A stretch of DNA of 64,000 bases from Podarcis muralis (taxonomy: Eukaryota), in contig NC_135659.1 of assembly GCF_964188315.1 (NCBI RefSeq), forward strand, positions 40,548,001-40,612,000, read 5' to 3'. The notes beneath the pieces are model-generated. The model was not told the origin of the DNA. It saw nothing but the letters and a program-made list of their open reading frames with translations, and ran no database searches. The position numbers and the translations under genes are program-made. This document shows positions 1,261 through 37,901 of the stretch, in pieces (the stretch's first letter is position 1; each line of letters starts with the position of its first letter).

Positions 1261-1425
1261 TAGGCTCAGTCAGTCTTGAAGTGAGTGGAAGCTTGCCTTC
1301 TGTCAACTTCAGTAATGTTTTGTGAACTGTTGTTCTAAGCACGTTTTTCAGATTATTCAAAAACGTATCCGGTGCATTTGGATGCCATCGTATTAACACA
1401 CCAATTTCATGACATTCTCTTATAA

Positions 1426-1656
<231 letters not shown>

Positions 1657-2646
1657 TAGAGTGTGTTGGCACTAATTTTCCAAAGAGATGCACTGAGAAT
1701 AGCCGGCATTGTCCATATCTCAATTAAAGCATCCATGACAGATGGCCATTCAACCTCTGCTTAAAAAGTCGAACTGCCCTTAATGTTATAATTGGGTTAA
1801 TATTAGAAGGACTAACTTGCCCACAGCATGGTACTGAATGCCATAACTTAATTGCGCACTGGTTGCATTTACATGCTCATATCTAGGCTTTGACTCTCTG
1901 CTTGCAGTACTTTGTTCCTCCTTTTGTGTGAGCAAACAGACAAGCCTGTTAACTATAGTTTTTCATTTTTTTCAATGCTATTGAACAGTAGAAACTAGGG
2001 TTCTGAAGCGATTGACTAGCCCATGATATGAAGGCAACTTTGAACTTGTTTGTGTTAAAAAAAAGTGTTGGAATAACTCTTCATGACGTGCAGCCCTGAA
2101 ATTTGGTATACATGGGTCCAAGAGGCCAAAATTACTGGTTTGGGGTTTTTTTTTGAAAATGTGATATTTATACACCCTTCTTGCAATATAGGGCACTCAA
2201 AGGACACCTCAAAATGGGCAGATTGTTTACACATTAACTAAGAATGATGTGCGTATATAGATCAAGATCCCTTGAATACTAGAAAAGTAAAAAAACAAGA
2301 TTTAGCAAGTTTCTCCCTAGAAACTAGAGGGCAATAAATGAATCTTTCAAGTGACTCAGGTAGTTCAAGACTGTTCGCACAGCTGAAATATGGCAGATAC
2401 ATAGAATGTAGATTGGAAGCGACCACATGGACCATATTCAACCTTCTGCAATGCAGGGGATTTTTTGCCCGATGTGGGGTTCGAACCCACACCCATTCCA
2501 TAGCTGCTTCCAGATTCTTTCCTTCCATGTATTTTCTCAATAGAAGTGGCTATTTCTATTAATAGTTCTGTTCTTACGTTAAAAGTGAGTCTCCTCAATG
2601 TACACTCCCCCCAAAAAAAGTAGTTTAAAAAGGAACTTGTATTTAA

Positions 2647-2940
<294 letters not shown>

Positions 2941-3214
2941 TAGCTCTCTTGTAGAAAGCGTGTAGGGCAAGTGGAGATGTCAGCCGAAGAACCTTTTCGT
3001 AATGCGCAGTAGAGTTTTACAAACAGAAGCCACGTTCTGAGTAGCCTAATTAAACCCCAGTGGGGTTTTGCAAAACCTCAGTCCACTGCTAAGAGCTTCC
3101 CTACAAAAAGATATTTCCTGCTGGAAGGCAGCCTCTTTTGAAACTTGGGGTGTGAAAGAAGGCATGTTTCCTAGCTCCAAGAATAACACAGGTGTCTCCC
3201 AACCAATCTTGCAG

Positions 3215-3365
3215 AAGGAGAGGTTTTATGAAGGGCATTTCACGCTTCCAGTCCCATCCTGCAAGGAGCTGGCTGACCTGATGAAGCAGTGCATGCACTA
3301 TGACCCCAGCCAGAGACCATTCTTCAGAGCAATCATGCGAGACATCAACAAGCTAGAAGAACAAA
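3215..3365 (+). CDS. JAK1: JAK1 coding exon ([50 protein letters not shown])
   Basis: gcag|AAG acceptor, AAA|gtaagt donor; end of JH2. Confidence 0.97.
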
Positions 3366-4135
3366 GTAAGTAATCTATTCTGCTTATTTCCCCTCTTCAT
3401 TGTCAGTTTTATTTTCTTTGCTCTGTGGGATACATGAACATTAATGAATTTGCAAACATCTTGATGGCAGTATAAAAAAGCCATATATAGTCCCCCGCAG
3501 GCACAGAAGGGATTTGCTGTTCAGAAAGTAAGATAGTTACCAAGATGGCTCTATACATAAAAATCTGCAACCCGACACTGTTTTGGATTGCCGTTGTCAT
3601 GGAATATTGTTTGTGTTACAGTAGTTATGGAAGCATCCAGGGTGACGTAAGGGTGGAGCTGTCAAACTCTGCCTCACCATCGGTTCCTGTGTATTAATGA
3701 TTATTTTGCCAGTGTTAATACCCCTCCCATAGCCCTTAGTATACACGGAGAGGTTGTGTGTAGTCTTCTTGCCCACACCTTGTGCTATGATTCTGCTTGC
3801 CTTGGTGAGAAGGTGCTTGGCTCTCGGCTAGGAATAAGACAAGGTTTACTATGAACATTCAGAATGGAGCGGGTGACTGCTAATCCCTGCCCTCAGATAT
3901 TGTCAGCTTCCCTCCCTCGTTTCTAAAGCAGTTGTCCATCTTCTGGGAAGATTTTCACTGGGGCCAATGATTTAGAGGAAGATACACAAATGTTAGGAAC
4001 CTGCAGTTTGAGAGAACATTCAGGAAGGTGATGGGGTCTGTTGAAATGCAGAGTAAACATATGTAAAAATAGATTTGAAAATTTAAAGGGTAAAAGTACT
4101 CATTTGTACCACACTAATATTCTTACCTGTGTCAG

Positions 4136-4230
4136 ATCCTGATATCGTCTCGGAGAAGAAGCCTAATGCAGAGATTGATCCTACCATATTTGAGAAACGC
4201 TTCTTGAAGCGCATTCGCGACTTAGGCGAG
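4136..4230 (+). CDS. JAK1: JAK1 coding exon ([32 protein letters not shown])
   Basis: gtcag|AT acceptor, GAG|gtatgt donor; JH2-JH1 linker and start of kinase domain; 95 bp. Confidence 0.96.
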
Positions 4231-5189
4231 GTATGTTTACTTCTATTGCTGCTGCTCAGTATTTTTTGAAGATTTGGCACTGAGGTGCTGTACAAGGTGC
4301 TCTTATTCCCCTTTTGCACCTGTAGTCATGGTGTGCTGAAACATAGGTGGCTTGTATTTTTGTTGTGATCATTCAGCATTGTGTTCCTTCTATTGTTTTT
4401 AGAGATGGGAATAACGTGTTAAGTCAGCCCATTTCTCTGTGCAGGGCAATGGATTTGTTCATATGTTTATAGAGCAAGTGAAGTGTGGAATATTCCCTTC
4501 TGACAGAAGTAAATATGCATAGGGCTCCAAAAGCAGCACAGAGTGCAAAGGGCAAGGTTTCTGAGTAGAGATATGCCTTAGCTCAAACCTACCTGGGAGT
4601 CCCACCTCCCTTGGTGTAAGTTCCAGGCCCCCGTTTTACTTGTAGCAAACACTTCAGTGAGAGAAAGTACCGCACACATGTTTTATAGACATTCTGTTTA
4701 TTGCTTGACATCTGTGGTAACTAACACCATCCAGAAGGCCACAACTCCCATCTGCCCCATCCAACATAGTCAGTCCAACGCCAGGTTAGCCACCCCTGGT
4801 TTTGTATGTTCAGTAGATATGTTCTGGTATTGCAAAGAGGGACTGAAACAGATACCCAGAAGCACCCAGTATGGAGTGGTTTTTGGTCCATAAGGGTTAA
4901 GCGATTGTCCCAAGAACCACAGATCCACTAAGCAATATTCAGAAGCAGATTCAAAAGTCTGTAAAAGAAACCTAGCAGGGATTTGGTTCCTATTCATTTT
5001 TCTTCTGTGGAACTTCTGAATAGTGGAGGTCACCCTGTTATTGCAGTGATGGCTGATCACAAATGCAGCCTATCACTGGGTATCATCGAAACATTCTCCT
5101 AGGTGAAGTAGCTGCCTGGTTTTCTCTTTCTTTTGCAAAGCAAGTGTGTGGTGGCTGACCATGGTTTTTTATTGTCTTTTTGAAATTAG

Positions 5190-5399
<210 letters not shown>

Positions 5400-5557
5400 T
5401 GAAAATGAAAATGTCATTGTGAATCATTCTTTTCCTTGGAACAGAAAGATTAGGAGGGATGGAAAGGTGTTAGGAAAACACTGGATGAAATGGACCATGG
5501 AAAATACTTAAAAAGTAATACTTGACCGCCCTGAGACCCCCAGGTATAGGGCAGTAT

Positions 5558-5560
<3 letters not shown>

Positions 5561-5614
<54 letters not shown>
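5561..5614. repeat. (AAT)18 microsatellite, probably the tail of an L2-type 3' end
   Basis: Perfect AAT run after CCGCCCTGAGACC...TATAGGGCAGTATATT. Confidence 0.95.
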
Positions 5615-5615
<1 letters not shown>

Positions 5616-5898
5616 TGGTCAAGGGTGTTGTGTATTGAATTTGCAGGCACAGAACAGTAGCAGAGCAGCCAGGAACTAATTAAGGGAGGTAGTGATTACT
5701 TTTAATTAGCTTCACCTGGGTGGGGTAGTCCTAGCCCAGGTGCCTATATATAGAAGCAGGGCTGGAGTTTTGTGTGTCTTTCTACTTGCTTGTTGCCATG
5801 AATAAAGATGTTACCATACCACCACTGGCTGGACTCACTATATAATAGGTGTTGACTCTGAAAATTGCTTGAGATAATTTTGGCTTTCTTGATCAAAG

Positions 5899-6023
5899 GT
5901 GGAAATGGAATTAAGCTAATCATGGAGTTTCTTCCTTCTGGAAGCCTAAAGGAATATCTTCCGCTAAACAAGAATAAAATCGGTCTGAAACAACAGTTGA
6001 AATACGCTGTACAAATCTGCAAG
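5899..6023 (+). CDS. JAK1: JAK1 coding exon ([42 protein letters not shown])
   Basis: aag|GT acceptor, AAG|gtaatg donor; hinge MEFLPSG; 125 bp. Confidence 0.96.
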
Positions 6024-20166: not shown

Positions 20167-20328
20167 GATAATTGTTTCTTGTAATGGTAATCTTCTTAAA
20201 ATGAAATATTTCTTTTTAAATAATTTGAAATACCGGGGTCGCTGGCATTATTTACAACTACAGTAACCACACTCCCCCTCCTGAGAAAACCCAAGGGTTG
20301 CCTTCAGAGGCACCCGTTACCTGCTTAC

Positions 20329-20440
20329 CTGAAAGACAGACTGAAGGCAGCACACTTGCCAAGTTCAAGTAGGGATTGGTACTCAGATGGATTTCCTTGG
20401 GAGGTTCTCCCAGCAGAGAGGTCTGGTTTTTTGAAGAACT
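20329..20440 (-). CDS. RAVER2: RAVER2 exon 10 ([37 protein letters not shown])
   Basis: ttcag acceptor, CAG|gtaagc donor; SLLGEPP PTB-interaction (PRI) motif. Confidence 0.95.
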
Positions 20441-20821
20441 CTGAAGTAAAAAGCGAATAAAATGTCGACACTTCTACTACAGGTTGAACAACATAAAAAA
20501 ACCCACACACATTTTGAACAGATATTGAAATTAAACATCCTATTAGGGAAATTTTACTTCTCATAACATAGACTCAAAGAGCTGAAGAGACTAAGGCTGC
20601 AATTCTATAATCCTATATAAGGAAGGAAACAGTAAATCAGCATTATGGGAATCAGCTGTTTAGGGTGGGTGCCTATGTGCAGAGATGAAGAAAGAAAATG
20701 GGTATAAAAATAAACAAAACCAAAAAAAAGGGTCCAAGAATGATATTCAGCTGTGCTATCCTGTTTGTGCAGTGGACTTCTGCTTCTATAAATGGGATTT
20801 AACCCTTCCTCTCTTCCTCAC

Positions 20822-22818: not shown

Positions 22819-23060
22819 CAGTCGTACTTGGGATCCCAAACATCTTGGTACTCAAGACTTTTCGGCTCTCAAATGCTGCAAACCCAGAAGTGAGTGTTCC
22901 AGTTTGCGAACATTCTTTGGAACCAGAACATCCAGTGGGGCTTCCGATTGGCTGCAGGAACTTCCTGCAAGCAATCAGAAGCCATGCTTTGGTTTCCAAA
23001 TGTTTTGGAATCCAAACAGACTTCCGGAACGCATTCCATTTGACTTCCAAGGTACGACTG
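22819..23060. mobile_element. Tc1/mariner (pogo/Tigger-like) MITE
   Basis: TA|CAGTCGTACTTGG ... CCAAGGTACGACTG|TA. Confidence 0.85.
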
Positions 23061-23199
23061 TACTGAACTTATAAAATTTATACACCTCTTGAATATAAAG
23101 AGAAGCAAAATAAAATCGAAGCAGTTTACAATGATAATAAAAAAAAGTTATCGTAAAAACACCCAAGTTTTAAAAACATTTTTTTTCAAAACTTCTTAC

Positions 23200-23465
23200 C
23201 CCCAAGCTTGAATCTGGGCTCTTTGCCTGGCCTTGTTGCTTGAGATGTCCTGCCCGTAGGCCTCCAGCAGCGACATTTGGTAAGCTTTGCAGGTAACCCT
23301 GGGACCCTGAGCCAGTGCCTTCTGTCAGTCCTACTGCGGTTGACAGCTTGTCCTGCGTGTTGTTTTGCCTTGGCACTGCTTGTCCAGATACATGCTGATT
23401 TGGAAAGAATGGCAACATGCCAATCCCTGTTGCAACCGGCGTTTGAGCTGCAGTCCGATTAGATA
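23200..23465 (-). CDS. RAVER2: RAVER2 exon 9 (SNRTAAQTPVATGIGMLPFFPNQHVSGQ...DSSLG)
   Basis: Branch-like CTAAT, pyrimidine tract, gcag acceptor; GGG|gtaaga donor; GMLPFFPNQH matches RAVER2. Confidence 0.9.
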
Positions 23466-24209
23466 CTGCGCAGCCAACCATAAATGGAAAAAAAGGAAGC
23501 TATATTAGGCAAGAATTATTACTAGAACATCATGCTCATGTTGCTTATTATGTGAAAAGCACTGAGAAATCTATTTAAATGATTGCAGCAGAAAAGATAA
23601 TTCTAGTGGCGGGCAAGGAAATACATTAAAACTCAAAAGACTCTCTAACTTTGCTATTTATACAACTGGTCTTACACCTTAACCGTTGCTAGCGACTGAA
23701 AAGGGGGATCTTGTGCTTTAAAATTTCACAGAGAAGAATTAAAAGAGGATGCCTTAGGCAAGAAAGCATTAGGACGAATCTTCTGTGGTGAAGGAGAAAG
23801 CTACGGCTCTTCATACCTTAAAAGATCTGAATTGTCAGTAATATGGGAGCCACCATCTGCTAACAAGAGGAACATAGACATAGACTCCTTCCAGAACTGC
23901 CATCACATACTGGCCATTCCAGCCCAGCAGTATGTCAGTCCACCTCCTCTTTATTACAGAGGAAACAATTTGGACCAGCCACGCTTTCCTTCAGGCCCTC
24001 CTGCCCCTGCCCCCGTTTCCTGTCCGTCCACCCCACCCCCGAGCCATGGGACTAGCCAAGAGGGGGCAGGGAGGGGCAGCTGCCACCCTGGATCAAGCAA
24101 AACAATAGAAATACTTAACTGACCAATCACGACAGTCCTGCCCACCCCCCCAAATCCTGGCTACGCCCATGCCCCCATTCCAAAGACATTCATAGTTCTG
24201 TAACTAAAC

Positions 24210-24882
24210 CAGTGTTTCCCAACCGGTGTTCCGCGGCACACTAGTGTGCCGCGAGACGTTGCCTGGTGTGCCGTGGGAGGGAGGCGGGCGAGTCGGGCGG
24301 CGGCGGCGAGGATCCGTGTCGAGCCGGGGGCGGCTCCGCGGTGGTGGTGCCGAGGTTTCTCTCTCCATTCTCCCCTCACGCACACACACACAGGAAATAA
24401 CACAGGATCAGCTGACAGGACCCGGCCAATGGGGCGGCGGCGGGGCAGCGCGCGCAAAAGGGAGGAGCGCGAGACAGCGGACGAGGAGGAGGCCGGCATG
24501 TCCGGGCAGCAGCAGCAACAACAGCAGCAGCAACTCCCGGCGACGGCTCCTCAAGCCCCGGGCAACCCTACTCCCTCACCGGCCTCGGCCGCCCTCCTGC
24601 TCCACCCGCCGCCGCCTCCCCCGCCGCCGCCGGCCACCTCGGCCCCGCCGCCGCCCCCTCCTCCGCCCGCTATCGCCGCCACCACCACAACAGCCGCCGC
24701 CGCCTCAGCTGGGCCCATGCCTGCCGGGAGCGGCGGCGGCAGCAGCAGCAGCAGCGCCCCGGCGCCCTTCCCTTCCGGCGTGACGCTGCGCGCTGACGTC
24801 ACGGGGCTGTAATGGTGATGTGCCTCGAGATTTTTTTCATCAAACAAGTGTGCCTTTGCCCAAAAAAGGTTGGGAAACACTG
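24210..24882 (+). mobile_element. Non-autonomous hAT (Charlie-like) Pack-TIR element, copy 1, carrying a RANBP9 5' fragment
   Basis: 15-bp TIR CAGTGTTTCCCAACC / GGTTGGGAAACACTG; 8-bp TSD AACTAAAC (24202-24209, 24883-24890); no transposase; GC-rich cargo. Confidence 0.95.
24498..24773 (+). pseudogene. RANBP9: Captured RANBP9 exon-1 coding fragment (MSGQQQQQQQQQL...SAALLLHPPPPPPPPPATSAPPPPPPPP...APAPFP); ORF open to 24812
   Basis: Motif order matches the recalled human RanBP9 N-terminus (MSGQ, polyQ-L, AAALLLHPPPPPPPAT, APFP). Confidence 0.85.
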
Positions 24883-25039
24883 AACTAAACAGGGTGTGAC
24901 AGAAGAAGTGGGAAATGCAAAACATGGAAGCCTCTTTAAGGAACATGGGTAGAATTGGAGGCGGAGCTTTCATTAAGACAATTTTTTTTAAAAATACATG
25001 GCGATACGCCCATTGTTTTTTCTGCTGCCTTCTTCCACA

Positions 25040-25148
25040 CATGCCAAGGTTGTGTGTTTGATCCCTGTATGGGACAACTGCATAGTTCTGCATTTGGTTT
25101 GGACTGGATGATACTCAGGGTCCCTTCTAACTCTGCAATTCTATGATT
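25040..25148 (+). mobile_element. SINE/CR1-tail fragment (related pieces near 2420-2490, 21885-21950, 48651-48735)
   Basis: GGACTGGATGATACTCAGGGTCCCTTCTAACTCT...ATTCTATGATT CR1-type 3' end. Confidence 0.7.
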
Positions 25149-25806
25149 ATTTAACTTTATCCTATAACAGGATTGCAGTCCCTCTACCAGGTATTTGAAA
25201 TCCACCATGGCAAACAACCATAGCTACCCATAAACTGTCTTTGTTAAACATTCTTGTTTCTAACACAGTTGCTAAAACAAAGCCAAGAGCATGCTATCTA
25301 AAGGGGCTGCTGTTCTTAATTATATATGCACTGTGGGAAATCCTTTTTTTAGCTCAAGGGCCACATTCCCTCATGGACAACCTTCCAGGGGCCACGTGCA
25401 AAAGTGGGCGGAGCAACAACTATGGCTCTTTACCATGGTTCAGTGGGCTGCATTGTACAACAGGCTACAGTCCTACCACATAAAAAGTCAGAGGTATCTG
25501 CATGCACCCACACCCCTCCACACAAACACTGTTCAATTCAGGCAAGCGAGAGCCATTTACACAGTTCAAAGACACATTCGAGGCAGAGAAAAGCACTTGC
25601 GCAACAGGTCCATTGAGGGTCATAACCCTGAAACAGAGGGCCACCCATGGCCAAGGAATGTGCCCTGGGAAAGAGTCCTGAAAGCCAAGACTGAAGGGCC
25701 TGGAAAGCTGCATTAGGCTTCCAGGACTGAGGTTCACCACCTGAGTCAGAAGCATATTTTTGAAGCGGGCGTTTGCTACTATAACAGCAATCAAAATGTT
25801 ACTTGC

Positions 25807-25918
25807 AATTGCGTGCTTCTCCGTGACTCCCCATGTCTGTGGTCACTGATGGCACAGCACCCATTCCTAACATTGTCTGAAGCAGCACACCTGGAGGCTC
25901 TCCAAGCAAGCCTGGTTT
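25807..25918 (-). CDS. RAVER2: RAVER2 exon 8 (KPGLLGEPPGVLLQTMLGMGAVPSVTTDMGSHGEARN), inferred GC donor
   Basis: ttgcag|AAA acceptor; GLLGEPP PRI motif; a phase-1 end fits only at T|gcaagt. Confidence 0.85.
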
Positions 25919-26177
25919 CTGCAAAGAAGTACAAAAGAATTGCATACGTTTAAGAGATGCCTTAGTAGACTTTGTTTCTTAGCCTTTCAAATGCAGGTAA
26001 TTTATTTGAGTATACTACTGGATTAACAGGAGACCAAAGAAACAAGGAAACATTTCGTGTGCGACAAGATAACATTCTCTAGGAGGAAGACTTCCCCACT
26101 TTTTATCTAATCCAGAATTACAGACTAAAGGAGATTAACTACAGGTTTATTATGGTCAGTCTAAGTTTTCAACTCAC

Positions 26178-26276
26178 ACTATTTGTCTGAATATTCTCAA
26201 TCTTCGCTAGTTGTGCCAGCTGTAAATTGGAAAGGTTCTGTAGCAGCAAACTAGATGCATTTCCAAGAACTGGTCC
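26178..26276 (-). CDS. RAVER2: RAVER2 exon 7 (GPVLGNASSLLLQNLSNLQLAQLAKIENIQTNS)
   Basis: acag|GGA acceptor, AGT|gtgagt donor; 99 bp, in frame. Confidence 0.9.
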
Positions 26277-27365
26277 CTGTCAGTTTAAAGTGGGAGGGGA
26301 GAAATGAGTTATATATGAAACCAGCATTATTCAGATACAGAAGAAGAAATATTTTCATATGTCTGTCAGAAAACTCTACAATCTCAGTTTAAAGAAAGGT
26401 AAATTCAAGGGCTACATTAATTAACTGCTTTTGTCAATTCACAATTCTGTTAAGAGGTTATTTAAAGTTACTCTATTATTCAGGATAGTCTCCATTATAA
26501 AGTGGAAGAACTATCTATTCCCTTCTTTTTTATACTACCTTAAGTCCCCTGCAGCAATCACTTTGAACCTCAAAGCATTTAATCTGCTCCCCCGCTCCCC
26601 TCAATGCTTGTTTCAATAGATGATATTGGACTTATACATTCTTCAAACCAAACAACTTTATCAAAAACACATTTGGAAGTAAACTGCAGTATAACACAGA
26701 TAAAGGGAGCTGCCAACTTTCTTCAACCAATTACATAAAAACAAAACCACTGGATTCTAAAGAAGCTGCAGCAATTTAAATTAGTCAGGAGTTAAGTATA
26801 AAAATAAATCTTTCAGCAATGATATCACAAGTATGGTGTTAAACAAAATATAGCTGATTATATGACAGTTTAATTAATCTTTCTGGGTCAAGTTTAATGA
26901 CTCATTTAAACCATAATTCTTCCGTTAAGTATAATCAGGGCATAATTCTGTTGCAAAGTAAAAGCACCTCCTTGTTTGGTCGTTGCATACCTAATCCAAG
27001 GCAGAATTCTCAAGGCTCATCATTCAGACTCTGACTACAGTCAAACATGCCTCCTCACTGTGATTTGAGGAAAGGCATTCCTGCTCCTTTGCAAAGCAGT
27101 TACATAATTGGCAAAGACCATAGAGATAAACACCAATGACATGTATTTGGGAAAGGGTTACTTTTTAAAATGCAACCATGCAACATGTTTCCAGTGATAC
27201 TTCCGGGGGGCGGGGAGCAATTTTATTTGGGTATAAATCAAAGTCCTACATAATAGCGGTAACAGCTAACACCTACACAACTTTAGCAGTTACACTTCCA
27301 AATGCAGAAGTGTGATTGACCCTCTGATCTGCCGAGTGTGAATCAACTGCATATCACGTTATACC

Positions 27366-27368
<3 letters not shown>

Positions 27369-27412
<44 letters not shown>
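27369..27412. repeat. (TC)n microsatellite
   Basis: Direct reading. Confidence 0.95.
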
Positions 27413-27414
<2 letters not shown>

Positions 27415-27515
27415 GGTTTAGAAAACAAACAAAAACAAACATCCTCATGCTTCAGCATATTTCTAGAAAAGTGAAGCAAGACTTATTCTCTTTAGATTCA
27501 TGTTGCCTTATAGAC

Positions 27516-28253
27516 CAGTGTTTCCCAACCTTTTTTGGGCAAAGGCACACTTGTTTGATGAAAAAAATATCGAGGCACACCACCATTACAGCCCCGTGAC
27601 GTCAGCGCGCAGCGTCACGCCGGGAGGGACGCACGAGCTCCTTCTCCTGCTCGTTCAGGGCCGGGTTGCCGCCGTGAGGGAAGGGCGCCGGGGCGCTGCT
27701 GCTGCTGCTGCCGCCGCCGCTCCCGGCAGGCATGGGCCCAGCTGAGGCGGCGGCGGCTGTTGTGGTGGTGGCGGCGATAGCGGGCGGAGGAGGGGGCGGC
27801 GGCGGGGCCGAGGTGGCCGGCGGCGGCGGGGGAGGCGGCGGCAGGTGGAGCAGGAGGGCGGCCGAGGCCGGTGAGGGAGTAGGGTTGCCCGGGGCTTGAG
27901 GAGCCGTCGCCGGGAGTTGCTGCTGCTGTTGTTGCTGCTACTGCCCGGACATGCCAGCCTCCTCCTCGTCCGCTGTCTCGCGCTCCTCCCTTTTGCGCGC
28001 GCTGCCCCGCCGCCGCCCCATTGGCCGGGTCCTGTCAGCTGATCCTGTGTTATTTCCTGTGTGTGTGTGTGAGGGGAGAATGGAGAGAGAAACCTCGGCA
28101 CCACCACCGCGGAGCCGCCCCCGGCTCGACGCGGATCCTTGCCGCCGCCGCCCCGCCTCTCGCCGCCCGACTCGCCCGCCTCCCTCCCATGGCACACCAG
28201 GCAAGGTCTCGCGGCACACTAGTGTGCCGCGGAACACCGGTTGGGAAACACTG
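27516..28253 (-). mobile_element. Non-autonomous hAT Pack-TIR element, copy 2 (inverted relative to copy 1)
   Basis: Same 15-bp TIRs; different 8-bp TSD TTATAGAC (27508-27515, 28254-28261); near-identical interior. Confidence 0.95.
27635..27952 (-). pseudogene. RANBP9: Captured RANBP9 exon-1 fragment, longer version ending APFPHGGNPALNEQEKEL; CAG>TAG stop at codon 5
   Basis: Manual translation gives PFPHGGNPALNEQEKEL versus recalled human PFPHGDSALNEQEKEL, a non-low-complexity match. Confidence 0.9.
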
Positions 28254-28625
28254 TTATAGACAGTCTGTTAAGAGAACAAGTTGGAGGCTTAGCATGTGTT
28301 TTCCTTTACCCATACAATAGAATTTTAAAGGGAAACACTATATTCGCTTTATAGTTTAGTCTTTACTTCTCCCTCCTCCAAACTTTAGAACAATCTGTCA
28401 TTGTGGGTCAAGTAAAAAATCCCAAGATTTCATGCTGTCTCAGACAGTTCAAAATGAGGGCAGGCTTTGAACATCTCCCTAACTGAAAGATGCTTTATTT
28501 TAACAGGTCCTTTTCTTTTTTCTGCTGTTTAATGAATAAATCAATGATATTTGGGCCTTTTCTCTCTCTTTTGAGAGTGCATTTAGGAAAGCAAGCATTA
28601 TTGTATTGCATTGTAAGATGATATA

Positions 28626-28901
28626 CCATATATACTCGAGTATAAGCCGACCAAAATATAAGCCGAGGCACCTAATTTTAGTACAAAAAACTGGGAAAAC
28701 TTATTGACTTGAGTATAAGCCGGTTCACCACACCACAAACCTGGTGGTGGTGGCAGCGGCGGAGGAAGAACAAGCAGCCTGAAAGGGCTCCTTTTGGGCT
28801 GCTCGTCCCTCCACGCCGCCATCCGCCTCACTTGAGTATAAGCCGAGGGGGGCTTTTTCAGCATAAAAAATGTGCTGAAAAAGTTGGCTTATACTCGAGT
28901 A
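28626..28901. mobile_element. TcMar (Tc2/pogo-like) MITE with truncated right TIR
   Basis: TA|CCATATATACTCGAGTATAAGCCG ... GGCTTATACTCGAGTA. Confidence 0.75.
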
Positions 28902-29007
28902 AGAATTCCAACGATATTTCAGCACTCCATTCTGAAGTGTGGATCATAAAATATATTATTTATTATTATATGAGAAGTCAATGAAAACAGGTGGTATTCA
29001 ACTAAAG

Positions 29008-29137
29008 CAGGCATAGGCAAACTCGACCCTCCAGATGTTTTGGGACTACGACTCTCATCATCCCTAGCTAACAGGACCAGTGGTCAGGGATGACAGGAGC
29101 TGTAGTCTCAAAACATCTGGAGAGCAGAGTTTGGGGG
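29008..29137. mobile_element. Small hairpin-type hAT MITE (relative near 31950-32070)
   Basis: CAGGCATAGGCAAACT end; internal inverted CCAGATGTTTTGGGACTAC / GTAGTCTCAAAACATCTGG. Confidence 0.7.
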
Positions 29138-29457
29138 GTAACTGAATTAAAGAGCTGCACGAGCAAAATTAAGATCCAGTTGCACAATGGAACTTACTTC
29201 CTTTCTTGTCCATGTGCCATCCCCAAATCTGTTCTGCTGGGTTGGGGAAAGCCCCGTAACAGATCTAGTGCGGATGGGGAGAATGTTCCACTGGACAAGG
29301 AGAAATATTTGCACTGAAGCAATGTTCCTCTTAATGCTATATTGACTACAGCCCTAGATTACAATTGACATTTTGCACTAGCTGCACATGAACTCTCACT
29401 GTGCATGTTGACTTAAATTACTTACTGAAAATATTTTATATCAGCTTATAGACATAC

Positions 29458-29543
29458 CTGATGAACATTGTTGAAATGCAAAAAGGCTGGGTTGATTGAT
29501 GGGTTTACAAGGTGGGGCACACTCATGGGAGCTCCAAGGACTG
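29458..29543 (-). CDS. RAVER2: RAVER2 exon 6 (AVLGAPMSVPHLVNPSINPAFLHFNNVHQ)
   Basis: AAG/CAG tandem acceptor, CAG|gtatgt donor; 86 bp. Confidence 0.92.
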
Positions 29544-37431: not shown

Positions 37432-37901
37432 CTGATAAAACACAGGGTTATATTTCGATGAAAAAGTTTGCATCAGATCCTCTGCATCTGTGTAGTCTGT
37501 AGGGAGGTTTTCCACACAAAGGCACTTTGAATGTATGAGTTCTGGAGTTAACTGATTGACATCCATCCACTGAGCAAAAAGGGCATTCCCACCTACTTGT
37601 TTCCCTAGAAGGTCCAACCTAGCTTTAGCTGCAGAATCCTTTTTCATGTATTCCACAAAACCATAGCCCTTCGAATACCCAGTGATTTCACTATAAATCA
37701 AAAAGTGTCTTTCAACATTGCCATAGGGCCGCACCAACTCTTCAAACTCTTGCAATGTATAGGAGCGTGGTAAGTTGGTAATGCAGAGCAGGGCATCTGT
37801 TGGCTGAAGTTGCACTGAGATTTCTTTTCCTCGAAGGGAGTATTGGTGAAACAACCGTATTGCATTCTGAGCCTGCTCTCCATTCAGTAAAGTAACAAAA
37901 G
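37432..37901 (-). CDS. RAVER2: RAVER2 exon 3 (RRM1 end, RRM2, RRM3 start: [15 protein letters not shown]...[12 protein letters not shown]...YNPVFYQ)
   Basis: RNP1 KGYGFVEY; tttcag acceptor, CAG|gtatgt donor; 470 bp. Confidence 0.98.

What the first reader, a model, noticed from the sequence alone, without database searches (positions are those of the whole stretch)
24210..28253. Pack-hAT transposon that captured the 5' end of host gene RANBP9
Seen: two transposase-free elements with 15-bp TIRs (CAGTGTTTCCCAACC) and 8-bp TSDs. Their GC-rich interior encodes MSGQQQQQQQQQL...SAALLLHPPPPPPPPPATSAPPPPPPPP...APAPFP, extended in copy 2 to PFPHGGNPALNEQEKEL before an abrupt switch to transposon sequence. 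Established: hAT elements make 8-bp TSDs, and the recalled human RanBP9 N-terminus reads MSGQ..QQQQQQQQL..AAALLLHPPPPPPPAT..APFPHGDSALNEQEKELQRR. Inference: this is a gene-capturing DNA transposon (Pack-TIR, analogous to plant Pack-MULEs) carrying about 0.5 kb of RANBP9 upstream/5'UTR and exon 1. Such elements are seldom reported in vertebrates, and I do not know of this one being described.
Basis: partly seen in the sequence, partly recalled or inferred. Interest (0 to 1): 0.93.

Follow-up and report, generated by a model that had tools for sequence, protein, structure and literature searches.

The report
Amplified lizard hAT transposon carrying RANBP9 start
Two copies of a small cut-and-paste (hAT) transposon whose middle was copied from the start of the host gene RANBP9 sit in introns of a Raver-family gene; they belong to a family of hundreds to thousands of copies, an unusually successful gene-fragment carrier for a vertebrate.

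Summary
There are two transposase-free elements: 24210-24882 on the + strand and 27516-28253 on the - strand. Both have identical 15-bp TIRs and perfect 8-bp TSDs that differ between the copies.

The interior from about -22 of the ATG to codon 105 is RANBP9 exon 1. Human RanBP9 is the best PDB hit. Three true squamate RANBP9 loci align up to the junction and then run on into the conserved KRRLKRLYPAV segment.

The element is not a rare Pack-TIR. By DNA word depth, the ATG-proximal cargo is roughly 1,000-6,000 times single copy, and the NEQEKEL segment roughly 60-450 times. At least 21 Podarcis muralis protein models carry pieces of the same family, some with the whole of exon 1.

Copy 2 is the older, longer deletion grade. 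Copy 1 is a further 52-nt deletion form, which appears to be the commonest.

The 166-215 bp of GC-rich DNA upstream of the RANBP9 part could not be traced to RANBP9. Part of it is shared with relatives that have other GC-rich interiors.

The kind is known (Pack-TIR, Tan 2021; Helitron/NUBPL in bats). The scale is unusual. The scan noted this family before on other DNA of the same genome (12 notes, one follow-up with the same reading).

The parts
24202..24209 (.). Left target-site duplication of copy 1 (AACTAAAC); its twin is at 24883-24890.
24210..24882 (+). Copy 1, 673 bp. This is the short grade, lacking 52 nt of cargo/TE junction and 15 nt in the left GC-rich part. It is about 0.3-0.45% from the family majority.
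24210..24278 (+). Transposon left end of copy 1: TIR 24210-24224, a 22-nt palindrome and three GTGTGCC/GGCACAC subterminal motifs. Cargo-free relatives turn A/T-rich after 24278.
   Evidence: (loose ends at 24278)
24279..24475 (+). GC-rich stretch of untraced origin. 24279-24312 is shared with relatives that have other GC-rich interiors. 24313-24475 holds a CCAAT box and GC boxes.
24476..24773 (+). RANBP9-derived part of copy 1: about 22 nt of 5'UTR plus codons 1-92.
24498..24812 (+). Open frame of 104 codons plus stop. It is the polyQ/polyP N-terminus of RANBP9 with a 12-residue tail read from transposon DNA. It has no Pfam domain.
24774..24882 (+). Transposon right end of copy 1: a perfect TGACGTCA site at 24794-24801, two (A/G)TGTGCC motifs and TIR 24868-24882.
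24883..27515 (-). Host DNA between the inverted pair. It contains minus-strand Raver-family coding sequence: an ORF at 25802-25978 with a GLLGEPP motif, and RNA cover at about 25768-25931 and 26096-26259.
27508..27515 (.). Target-site duplication of copy 2 (TTATAGAC); its twin is at 28254-28261.
27516..28253 (-). Copy 2, 738 bp, the longer and older grade. It is about 1.1% from the family majority, mostly by CpG transitions.
27516..27636 (-). Transposon right end of copy 2 (TIR 27516-27530). Relatives diverge from it at 27636, and a more distant set at 27588.
27637..27974 (-). RANBP9-derived part of copy 2: about 22 nt of 5'UTR plus codons 1-105, ending after EKEL inside exon 1. The junction carries 2 nt (TC) that fit both the gene and the transposon.
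27938..27940 (-). Private TAG stop at codon 5 of copy 2. Every other copy sampled in three DNA runs and one RNA run reads CAG.
27975..28184 (-). GC-rich stretch of untraced origin in copy 2. 28136-28184 is shared with relatives having other GC-rich interiors. A subfamily lacks 28013-28093.
28185..28253 (-). Transposon left end of copy 2 (TIR 28239-28253).

Best explanation
These are two insertions of a non-autonomous hAT transposon family of a lacertid lizard, most likely Podarcis muralis or a very close relative. A hAT transposase made elsewhere in the genome would recognise the 15-bp TIRs and the subterminal GTGTGCC repeats, cut the element out and paste it in, making 8-bp duplications. Once, in an ancestor, host DNA was copied between the ends during gap repair or template switching. 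That DNA was the 5'UTR end and first coding exon of RANBP9; in the longest relatives it includes all of exon 1 and about 100 nt of intron 1. It sits next to a further GC-rich piece of untraced origin. Later internal deletions between short direct repeats (TC, then TCCCT) gave shorter grades that kept transposing. The family reached hundreds to thousands of copies and is shared with closely related species. Copy 2 is an older member of the grade that ends at EKEL. Copy 1 is a younger member of the 52-nt-shorter grade, which is the commonest. Both landed independently, in opposite orientation, in introns of a Raver-family (probably RAVER2) gene. Neither copy shows transcription of its own, and the carried frame is most likely a passenger, not a gene. 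Shown here: TIRs, TSDs, homology to RANBP9, the junctions, multicopy status and the deletion relationships. Inferred: trans-mobilisation by a hAT transposase, the capture mechanism, a single capture event, and the order of the grades.
For: TIRs and TSDs. The TIR differs by one base from the published Anolis hAT-N3_AC TIR (CAGTGGTTCCCAACCT). Both TSDs have the central TA and fit 5 of the 6 specified positions of that group's NYYTARRN target consensus (PMC3014272).

RANBP9 origin: the best PDB hits are human RanBP9, aligned to its residues 62-147. A Logan protein that is a true exon 1 matches at E 9e-18. Three TIR-free RANBP9 loci (L001, L004, Gekko kuhli L003) align at 73-74% nt from about -22 of the ATG to exactly the junction, then continue KRRLKRLYPAV...HYKG and a splice donor.

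Multicopy status: word depth over the cargo is far above the single-copy flanks. At 27940 it is 308,687/41,729/12,680 against flank depths of 52/12.5/10. One 91-nt contig covering 27941-28028 has depth 2148 against 10. Runs with only 5-19 Mb of contigs still hold 67-80% of the cargo words, and runs labelled as three other organisms hold 63-80%.

At least 21 distinct P. muralis protein models carry pieces of the family. These include the left-end frame GGERRGGGGEDPRR and the TIR read as GWETL followed by different residues, which means different insertion sites.

Long forms exist in the window's own species. A contig runs from copy 2's cargo on into KRCLKWLYPA, and the loose end at 27636 translates to the tail of model P0131.

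Private changes put copy 2 at about 1.1% and copy 1 at about 0.3-0.45% from the family majority.
Against: The parental RANBP9 locus of the same genome could not be fetched, so the capture boundaries and the origin of 24279-24475 / 27975-28184 are not settled. Copy numbers rest on summed assembler word depth of Logan contigs, which the tool itself warns is not a copy number, and the three runs differ about five-fold. No autonomous hAT with this TIR was seen. No empty-site allele was seen in three individuals, so recent mobility of these two copies is not shown. A single capture is inferred from shared junctions, not from a tree.
Confidence: 0.88

Rival explanations
1. The cargo is composite. 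The RANBP9 piece was added to (or replaced part of) an element that already carried a piece of another CpG-island promoter, so the GC-rich DNA upstream of about -22 is not RANBP9's own promoter. This concerns only the origin of the upstream part and is compatible with the main explanation.
For: Relatives share 28136-28184 (element positions 70-118) and then continue with other GC-rich sequence, while cargo-free relatives turn A/T-rich already at position 69 (loose ends at 28136 and 24278). Nothing upstream of about -22 aligns to three true RANBP9 loci. An earlier follow-up in this scan reached this reading (s1-175884).
Against: RANBP9 upstream regions barely align even between gecko and the L001 species (score 31 against a null of 15), so non-alignment says little. 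A 23-nt exact match, inverted, links element positions 70-92 to the RANBP9 upstream region of L001. The stretch has a CCAAT box at a promoter-like distance from the ATG.
Confidence: 0.45
2. Each copy arose on the spot by transposition-independent gap filling of a resident hAT element with RANBP9 DNA. This is the common route for single-copy animal Pack-TIRs.
For: Tan et al. 2021 found this to be the main origin of single-copy Pack-TIRs in animals.
Against: The two copies share identical cargo/transposon junctions but have different TSDs. The cargo is present at hundreds to thousands of times single-copy depth. Many P. muralis models show the same junctions next to different flanks.
Confidence: 0.02
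3. The likeness to RANBP9 is a low-complexity accident (polyQ, polyP, polyA/S), and the interior is the transposon's own sequence.
For: Most of the 104 codons are low complexity. The PDB E-values are modest (0.002 and 0.03).
Against: The order of all blocks is conserved with true squamate exon 1 over the whole length (75% identity). The non-repetitive PFPHGG(D/N)PALNEQEKEL segment and the 5'UTR bases before the ATG match. Longer family members continue into the invariant 45-residue RANBP9/10 segment up to the exon end.
Confidence: 0.01
4. The carried frame is a young protein-coding gene family (a disordered polyQ/polyP protein) kept by selection.
For: Copy 1 keeps an intact 104-codon frame with its ATG in a good context. 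Ensembl built many protein models on family members.
Against: Copy 2 has a stop at codon 5 and two further amino-acid changes, all of them ordinary decay. The grades break the frame at different places and several models read it out of frame. There is no domain. No RNA read carries either copy's private bases at 24317, 27667 or 27940.
Confidence: 0.03

Closest known systems
Pack-TIR / Pack-hAT elements of animals (Tan et al. 2021, Nat Commun 12:4280, PMC8277862), e.g. Pack-hAT-N8_XT carrying the CAPSL 5'UTR in Xenopus tropicalis
   Same: A non-autonomous hAT with intact TIRs and 8-bp TSDs carries a fragment of the 5' end of a host gene. Separate insertions have different TSDs.
   Different: That survey found only four multicopy cases among 370, and its worked frog example has three copies. 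It found none in the one lizard scanned (anoCar2, where no hAT was annotated). Here depth points to hundreds to thousands of copies, with a series of nested deletion grades.
HelibatN3 Helitrons of vespertilionid bats carrying the NUBPL promoter, first six codons and splice donor (Grabundzija et al. 2016, PMC4778049; Thomas et al. 2014, PMC4224331)
   Same: In a vertebrate, a captured promoter-proximal gene fragment was amplified to very many copies. The long forms here also keep the exon-1 splice donor, so the same exon-trap effect is conceivable.
   Different: The transposon class and capture mechanism differ: rolling-circle read-through there, cut-and-paste hAT with TIRs and TSDs here. Promoter and exon-trap activity was shown experimentally for HelibatN3 and is untested here. 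The two copies in this window lack the splice donor.
Pack-MULEs and other Pack-TYPE elements of plants
   Same: TIR transposons whose interior is host gene fragments, often GC-rich 5' ends, sometimes stitched from more than one locus, and amplified by transposition.
   Different: The superfamily differs (Mutator: 9-11-bp TSDs and long TIRs), and so does the kingdom.
Lizard hAT MITE families of the SPIN / hAT-N3_AC group (Novick et al. 2011, PMC3014272)
   Same: The TIR is one base different from that of hAT-N3_AC. It shares 8-bp TSDs with a central TA, a size of 0.6-0.8 kb, and copy numbers in the hundreds to thousands.
   Different: None of the 4 terms searched in that paper (2 TIR strings, 'captured', 'host gene') turned up a host-derived interior; I did not read its full text. 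Those families were described in Anolis, not in lacertids.

Membership tests
hAT superfamily, non-autonomous element | 8-bp target-site duplication | tested here: met
   Both copies have perfect 8/8 duplications, AACTAAAC and TTATAGAC.
hAT superfamily, non-autonomous element | Short TIRs of the CAG(T/G)G... type as in described hAT families | tested here: met
   The 15-bp TIR is perfect in all four ends. It differs by one base from the hAT-N3_AC TIR listed in PMC3014272.
hAT superfamily, non-autonomous element | Target preference of the group (NYYTARRN / nTnnnnAn) | tested here: inconclusive
   Both TSDs have the central TA and fit 5 of the 6 specified positions. Two sites are too few to judge.
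hAT superfamily, non-autonomous element | An autonomous partner encoding a hAT transposase with the same ends | not testable with these tools
   The TIR occurs only in these two copies in the window, and the genome itself cannot be searched.
Pack-TIR (sensu Tan et al. 2021) | Interior between the TIRs derived from a non-transposon host locus | tested here: met
   There is homology to RANBP9 exon 1 of human, gecko and two other squamates, ending at the junction.
Pack-TIR (sensu Tan et al. 2021) | Parental copy identified unambiguously in the same genome | not testable with these tools
   Only orthologous loci of other species and P. muralis protein models could be fetched. One read laying loose end shows longer cargo, or the parent, in the same species.
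Pack-TIR (sensu Tan et al. 2021) | The same transposon exists without the captured piece | tested here: met
   Many contigs and RNA reads share the ends and turn to A/T-rich sequence at 24278 and 27636/27588. Only short loose ends were seen, not whole elements.
Pack-TIR, multicopy by transposition | Several copies with the same junctions but different TSDs and flanks | tested here: met
   There are two such copies here. P. muralis models have the TIR (GWETL) followed by D, T, I, V, L, C or A. Depth also supports this.
Helitron gene capture (HelibatN3-like) | No TIRs and no TSD; 5'-TC ... CTRR-3' ends with a 3' hairpin; insertion between A and T | tested here: not met
   The elements have TIRs and 8-bp TSDs.
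Processed retrocopy of RANBP9 | Intron-less mRNA copy with a poly(A) tail and no sequence beyond the transcript | tested here: not met
   There is no poly(A). The cargo stops inside exon 1. Long relatives include intron 1 sequence.

The most novel reading that the evidence does not exclude
The family is the largest Pack-TIR amplification yet seen in an animal. Its long forms spread a CpG-rich promoter-proximal module (5'UTR, ATG, whole first exon and splice donor of RANBP9) to hundreds of sites. Some of these act as alternative promoters or exon traps and have made lineage-specific chimeric transcripts in lacertid lizards. The inverted pair here could in addition pair in the Raver pre-mRNA and alter splicing or circularise the exons between them.
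Probability: 0.25. Interest if true: 0.78.

Novelty: new member of a known kind. Interest (0 to 1): 0.6.

Why it matters
Cut-and-paste transposons that pick up host gene pieces are well known in plants. In animals they were thought to be almost always single-copy by-products of repair. A hAT family that carried a gene's first exon and neighbouring GC-rich DNA to roughly a thousand sites in a vertebrate would be a natural experiment in promoter and exon dispersal, comparable with the bat Helitron/NUBPL case but by a different mechanism. It also matters for annotation. At least 21 'uncharacterized' or 'RANBP10' protein models of Podarcis muralis are in fact copies of this transposon. The family also inflates CpG-island and RANBP9-like hits across the genome.

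Tried and rejected
An exact look-up of the P. muralis model P0003 and of the copy-1 ORF found no contig. The length window of the word-indexed protein search excludes full-length RANBP9.
- The single exhaustive protein search returned only 4 hits, because most of the query is low complexity.
- L002, a Logan contig sharing 163 nt with the cargo, turns into unrelated CpG-rich DNA at a CCG run. I treated it as a probable assembly chimera and did not use it.
- Alignment of the GC-rich upstream part to three RANBP9 upstream regions gave only weak blocks (z 3.5-4.8 against simple shuffles) and one isolated 23-nt exact inverted match. The true loci barely align to one another at that distance, so this neither supports nor refutes a RANBP9 origin.
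- There was no Rfam family in 23000-29500 and no Pfam domain in the ORFs.
- No paper in the searchable library mentions this TIR or a RANBP9-carrying transposon.
- I looked for an empty-site allele in three individuals and found none among the listed joints. Junction contigs of both copies are present in all three.
- I considered local hopping as the cause of two copies 2.6 kb apart. They belong to different deletion grades and differ in age, so neither is the direct daughter of the other. With about 10^3 copies, a pair this close is expected for roughly 1% of copies by chance.
Full report
**What is there**

The 15-mer CAGTGTTTCCCAACC occurs four times in the window, as two inverted pairs. None of 100 shuffles gave four matches. 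These pairs bound two elements: 24210-24882 (673 bp, + orientation) and 27516-28253 (738 bp, - orientation). Each is flanked by a perfect 8-bp duplication: AACTAAAC for copy 1 and TTATAGAC for copy 2.

The copies align end to end with 10 substitutions (1.5%), a 15-nt indel in the left GC-rich part, and a 52-nt stretch present only in copy 2. Neither holds a transposase frame.

The ends carry a 22-nt palindrome and five (A/G)TGTGCC motifs within about 110 nt of the termini. GC content is 70% and CpG observed/expected is 0.9, against 42% and 0.36 for the window.

**Superfamily**

Two features are those of hAT: 8-bp TSDs and a short TIR beginning CAGTG. The published table of Anolis hAT families lists hAT-N3_AC with the TIR CAGTGGTTCCCAACCT, one base different from this one. 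It lists the SPIN/hAT-N group with the target consensus NYYTARRN. Both TSDs here have the central TA and fit five of the six specified positions (PMC3014272). An autonomous partner could not be looked for.

**The cargo is RANBP9**

- Copy 1 has an open 104-codon frame from 24498.
- Copy 2 has the same frame, extended by PFPHGGNPALNEQEKEL, but with a TAG at codon 5.
- Against all PDB sequences, the two best hits are human RanBP9. The alignment runs from residue 62 to 147 of the full-length chain and ends at the query's last residue.
- The word-indexed protein search found a 153-residue Logan protein at E 9e-18. It is a true exon 1: it continues KRRLKRLYPAVDEQ...HYKG, and its contig L001 then shows a gtgagg splice donor.
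- Two more true loci were fetched: L004 (a relative of the L001 species) and L003 from the Gekko kuhli assembly. All three lack the TIR. All three align to the element at 73-74% nucleotide identity, from about 22 nt before the ATG to element position 619, and no further.
- At that point the genes read GAGCTC-AAGCGG, whereas copy 2 reads GAGCTC-GTGCGT. The break therefore lies inside exon 1 after EKEL, with two bases (TC) that fit either side.

**It is a large family, not a rare element**

Contigs of three DNA runs of the same species were laid on 23800-28700. The single-copy stretch between the elements has word depths of 52, 12.5 and 10. Summed depths over the element are far higher.

| Place | Summed depth in X1 / X4 / X9 | Approx. 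multiple of single copy |
|---|---|---|
| Transposon ends | 65,000-490,000 across the runs | thousands |
| 27940, just after the ATG | 308,687 / 41,729 / 12,680 | about 1,300-5,900 |
| 27667, in the NEQEKEL segment | 23,271 / 776 / 1,400 | about 60-450 |

A single 91-nt contig covering 27941-28028 has depth 2148 against 10. The tool warns that summed depth is not a copy number, so I take only the order of magnitude.

Two further observations support this:
- Runs with only 5-19 Mb of contigs still hold 67-80% of the cargo's sampled words.
- Runs labelled as three other organisms hold 63-80%.

The family is therefore abundant and shared with close relatives.

**Evidence from Podarcis muralis protein models**

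A search with the P. muralis model P0003 and a cluster look-up gave at least 21 distinct UniProt entries of that species that contain RANBP9 exon-1 sequence.

Translation of the window copies in other frames shows that these are the same family:
- The models' GGERRGGGGEDPRR is the left GC-rich part of the element.
- ATTAAATPGDGSSSPGQPYSLTGLGRPPAPP is the polyQ region read one frame off.
- GWETL is the TIR itself. It is followed by D, T, I, V, L, C or A in different models, which means different insertion sites.

Several models carry exon 1 through to HYKG. After that they continue in one of three ways: directly into the TIR, into about 33 codons of intron read-through, or (P0131) into transposon interior that ends VRPSRCDAAR.

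In the window's own species, the loose end at 27636 translates to GEKIETYTFVRPSRRDAAR, the same tail. Another contig continues from copy 2's cargo into KRCLKWLYPA.

The simplest reading is one capture of the 5'UTR end, all of exon 1 and some intron, followed by nested internal deletions:
- Copy 2's grade lost everything from EKEL to the right subterminal region (TC microhomology).
- Copy 1's grade lost a further 52 nt between two TCCCT repeats.

By depth, the shorter grade is about ten times commoner.

**Age and state of the two copies**

Sites where a copy differs from all or nearly all other reads mark its private changes:
- Copy 2 has about eight (27569, 27667, 27940, 27956, 28140, 28190 and two seen only in the pairwise comparison), about 1.1%. 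Five are CpG transitions.
- Copy 1 has two or three, about 0.3-0.45%.

CpG sites in copy 2 have therefore decayed roughly ten times faster than other sites, as in methylated DNA. The high CpG content reflects youth, not protection. At about 1e-9 substitutions per site per year (my assumption), the copies are a few million years old.

Junction contigs of both insertions are present in all three individuals, and no empty site was listed. In the RNA run, none of the reads over 24317, 27667 and 27940 carries the private base of these copies. The RNA signal therefore comes from other family members.

**What is not settled**

The 166-215 bp between the transposon's left end and about -22 of the ATG is GC-rich, with a CCAAT box, but it aligns to none of the three RANBP9 upstream regions. 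Those regions hardly align between gecko and the other two, so this says little.

Cargo-free relatives leave the element at position 69. Other relatives share positions 70-118 and then continue with different GC-rich sequence. This fits the earlier follow-up's view that the cargo is stitched from two host pieces.

Against that, a 23-nt exact but inverted match links positions 70-92 to the RANBP9 upstream region of L001. I leave this at about even odds.

**Setting**

A minus-strand exon at 37441-37878 matches human Raver-1 RRMs at E 1e-57, with about two thirds of residues identical in the printed alignment. This fits the paralogue RAVER2 better than an orthologue of RAVER1. Two [SG]LLGEPP motifs lie in minus-strand frames at 20261-20473 and 25802-25978. 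That these are PTB-binding motifs of Raver proteins is my own knowledge.

The two elements thus sit in introns, in opposite orientation, 2,633 bp apart, around at least one coding exon. Whether the 670-nt inverted pair affects splicing was not tested.

**Comparison with what is known**

Tan et al. 2021 found 370 Pack-TIRs in 100 animal genomes, 208 of them hAT. Only four were multicopy (three in frog, one in alligator). They found none in the lizard, where hardly any TIR elements were annotated.

Bat Helitrons amplified captured promoters of 15 genes to 4,690 copies. The NUBPL-carrying HelibatN3 acts as an exon trap.

The present family is a new member of the Pack-TIR kind. Its copy number is unusual for a cut-and-paste element in an animal.

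No paper in the searchable library describes it. The scan itself has noted the family 12 times on other DNA of this genome. One follow-up reached the same reading; I used it as a lead and tested it independently.

Noticed in passing
window 24279-24301 and 28162-28184; L001 1219-1241: A 23-nt exact match (GCCGCCCGACTCGCCCGCCTCCC) links the element's left GC-rich part to the region about 300 nt upstream of the RANBP9 ATG in a distant squamate. It lies in the opposite orientation to the cargo's coding part, with no extension on either side.
   Followed up: partly
window 24794-24801 and 27597-27604: There is a perfect palindromic TGACGTCA (CRE/ATF-type site) in the transposon's own right subterminal region, so every family member carries it.
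   Followed up: no
window 37441-37878 (-), 20261-20473 (-), 25802-25978 (-): The host gene is a Raver-family gene on the minus strand. One large exon encodes the end of RRM1, RRM2 and the start of RRM3, with about two thirds of residues identical to human Raver-1. Two frames carry [SG]LLGEPP motifs.
   Followed up: partly
window 28013-28093: A subfamily of the element lacks these 81 nt. It is seen as a joint in DNA contigs (depth 3132 against 12.5 in X4) and in 25 RNA reads, so it is a DNA deletion variant and not splicing.
   Followed up: partly
window 23964-24200, 24948-25360 and 28556-28700: Other high-copy repeats abut the insertions, at about 150-200, 500-1,800 and 230-320 times single-copy depth. 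The one at 24948-25360 has a SINE-like tail ending ...CAATTCTATGATT.
   Followed up: no
window 27373-27412: A (CT)n microsatellite of about 40 nt lies 100 nt from copy 2.
   Followed up: no
window 29018-29133: There is an inverted repeat with 48-nt arms (81% complementary) 20 nt apart, which looks like a small foldback/MITE-type element.
   Followed up: no
L002 1-1751 (Logan ERR14042001): This contig begins with 163 nt of the cargo (with a 12-nt deletion) and switches at a CCG run into an unrelated CpG-island-like region with an ATG and a GTGAGT donor. It is either an assembly chimera or another rearranged family member.
   Followed up: partly
P. muralis UniProt entries (P0003, P0007, P0008, P0043, P0046, P0049, P0056, P0059, P0065, P0125-P0136): At least 21 Ensembl-derived protein models, named 'uncharacterized' or 'RANBP10', are translations of copies of this transposon family, some read through the TIR. 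They are annotation artefacts worth flagging.
   Followed up: yes
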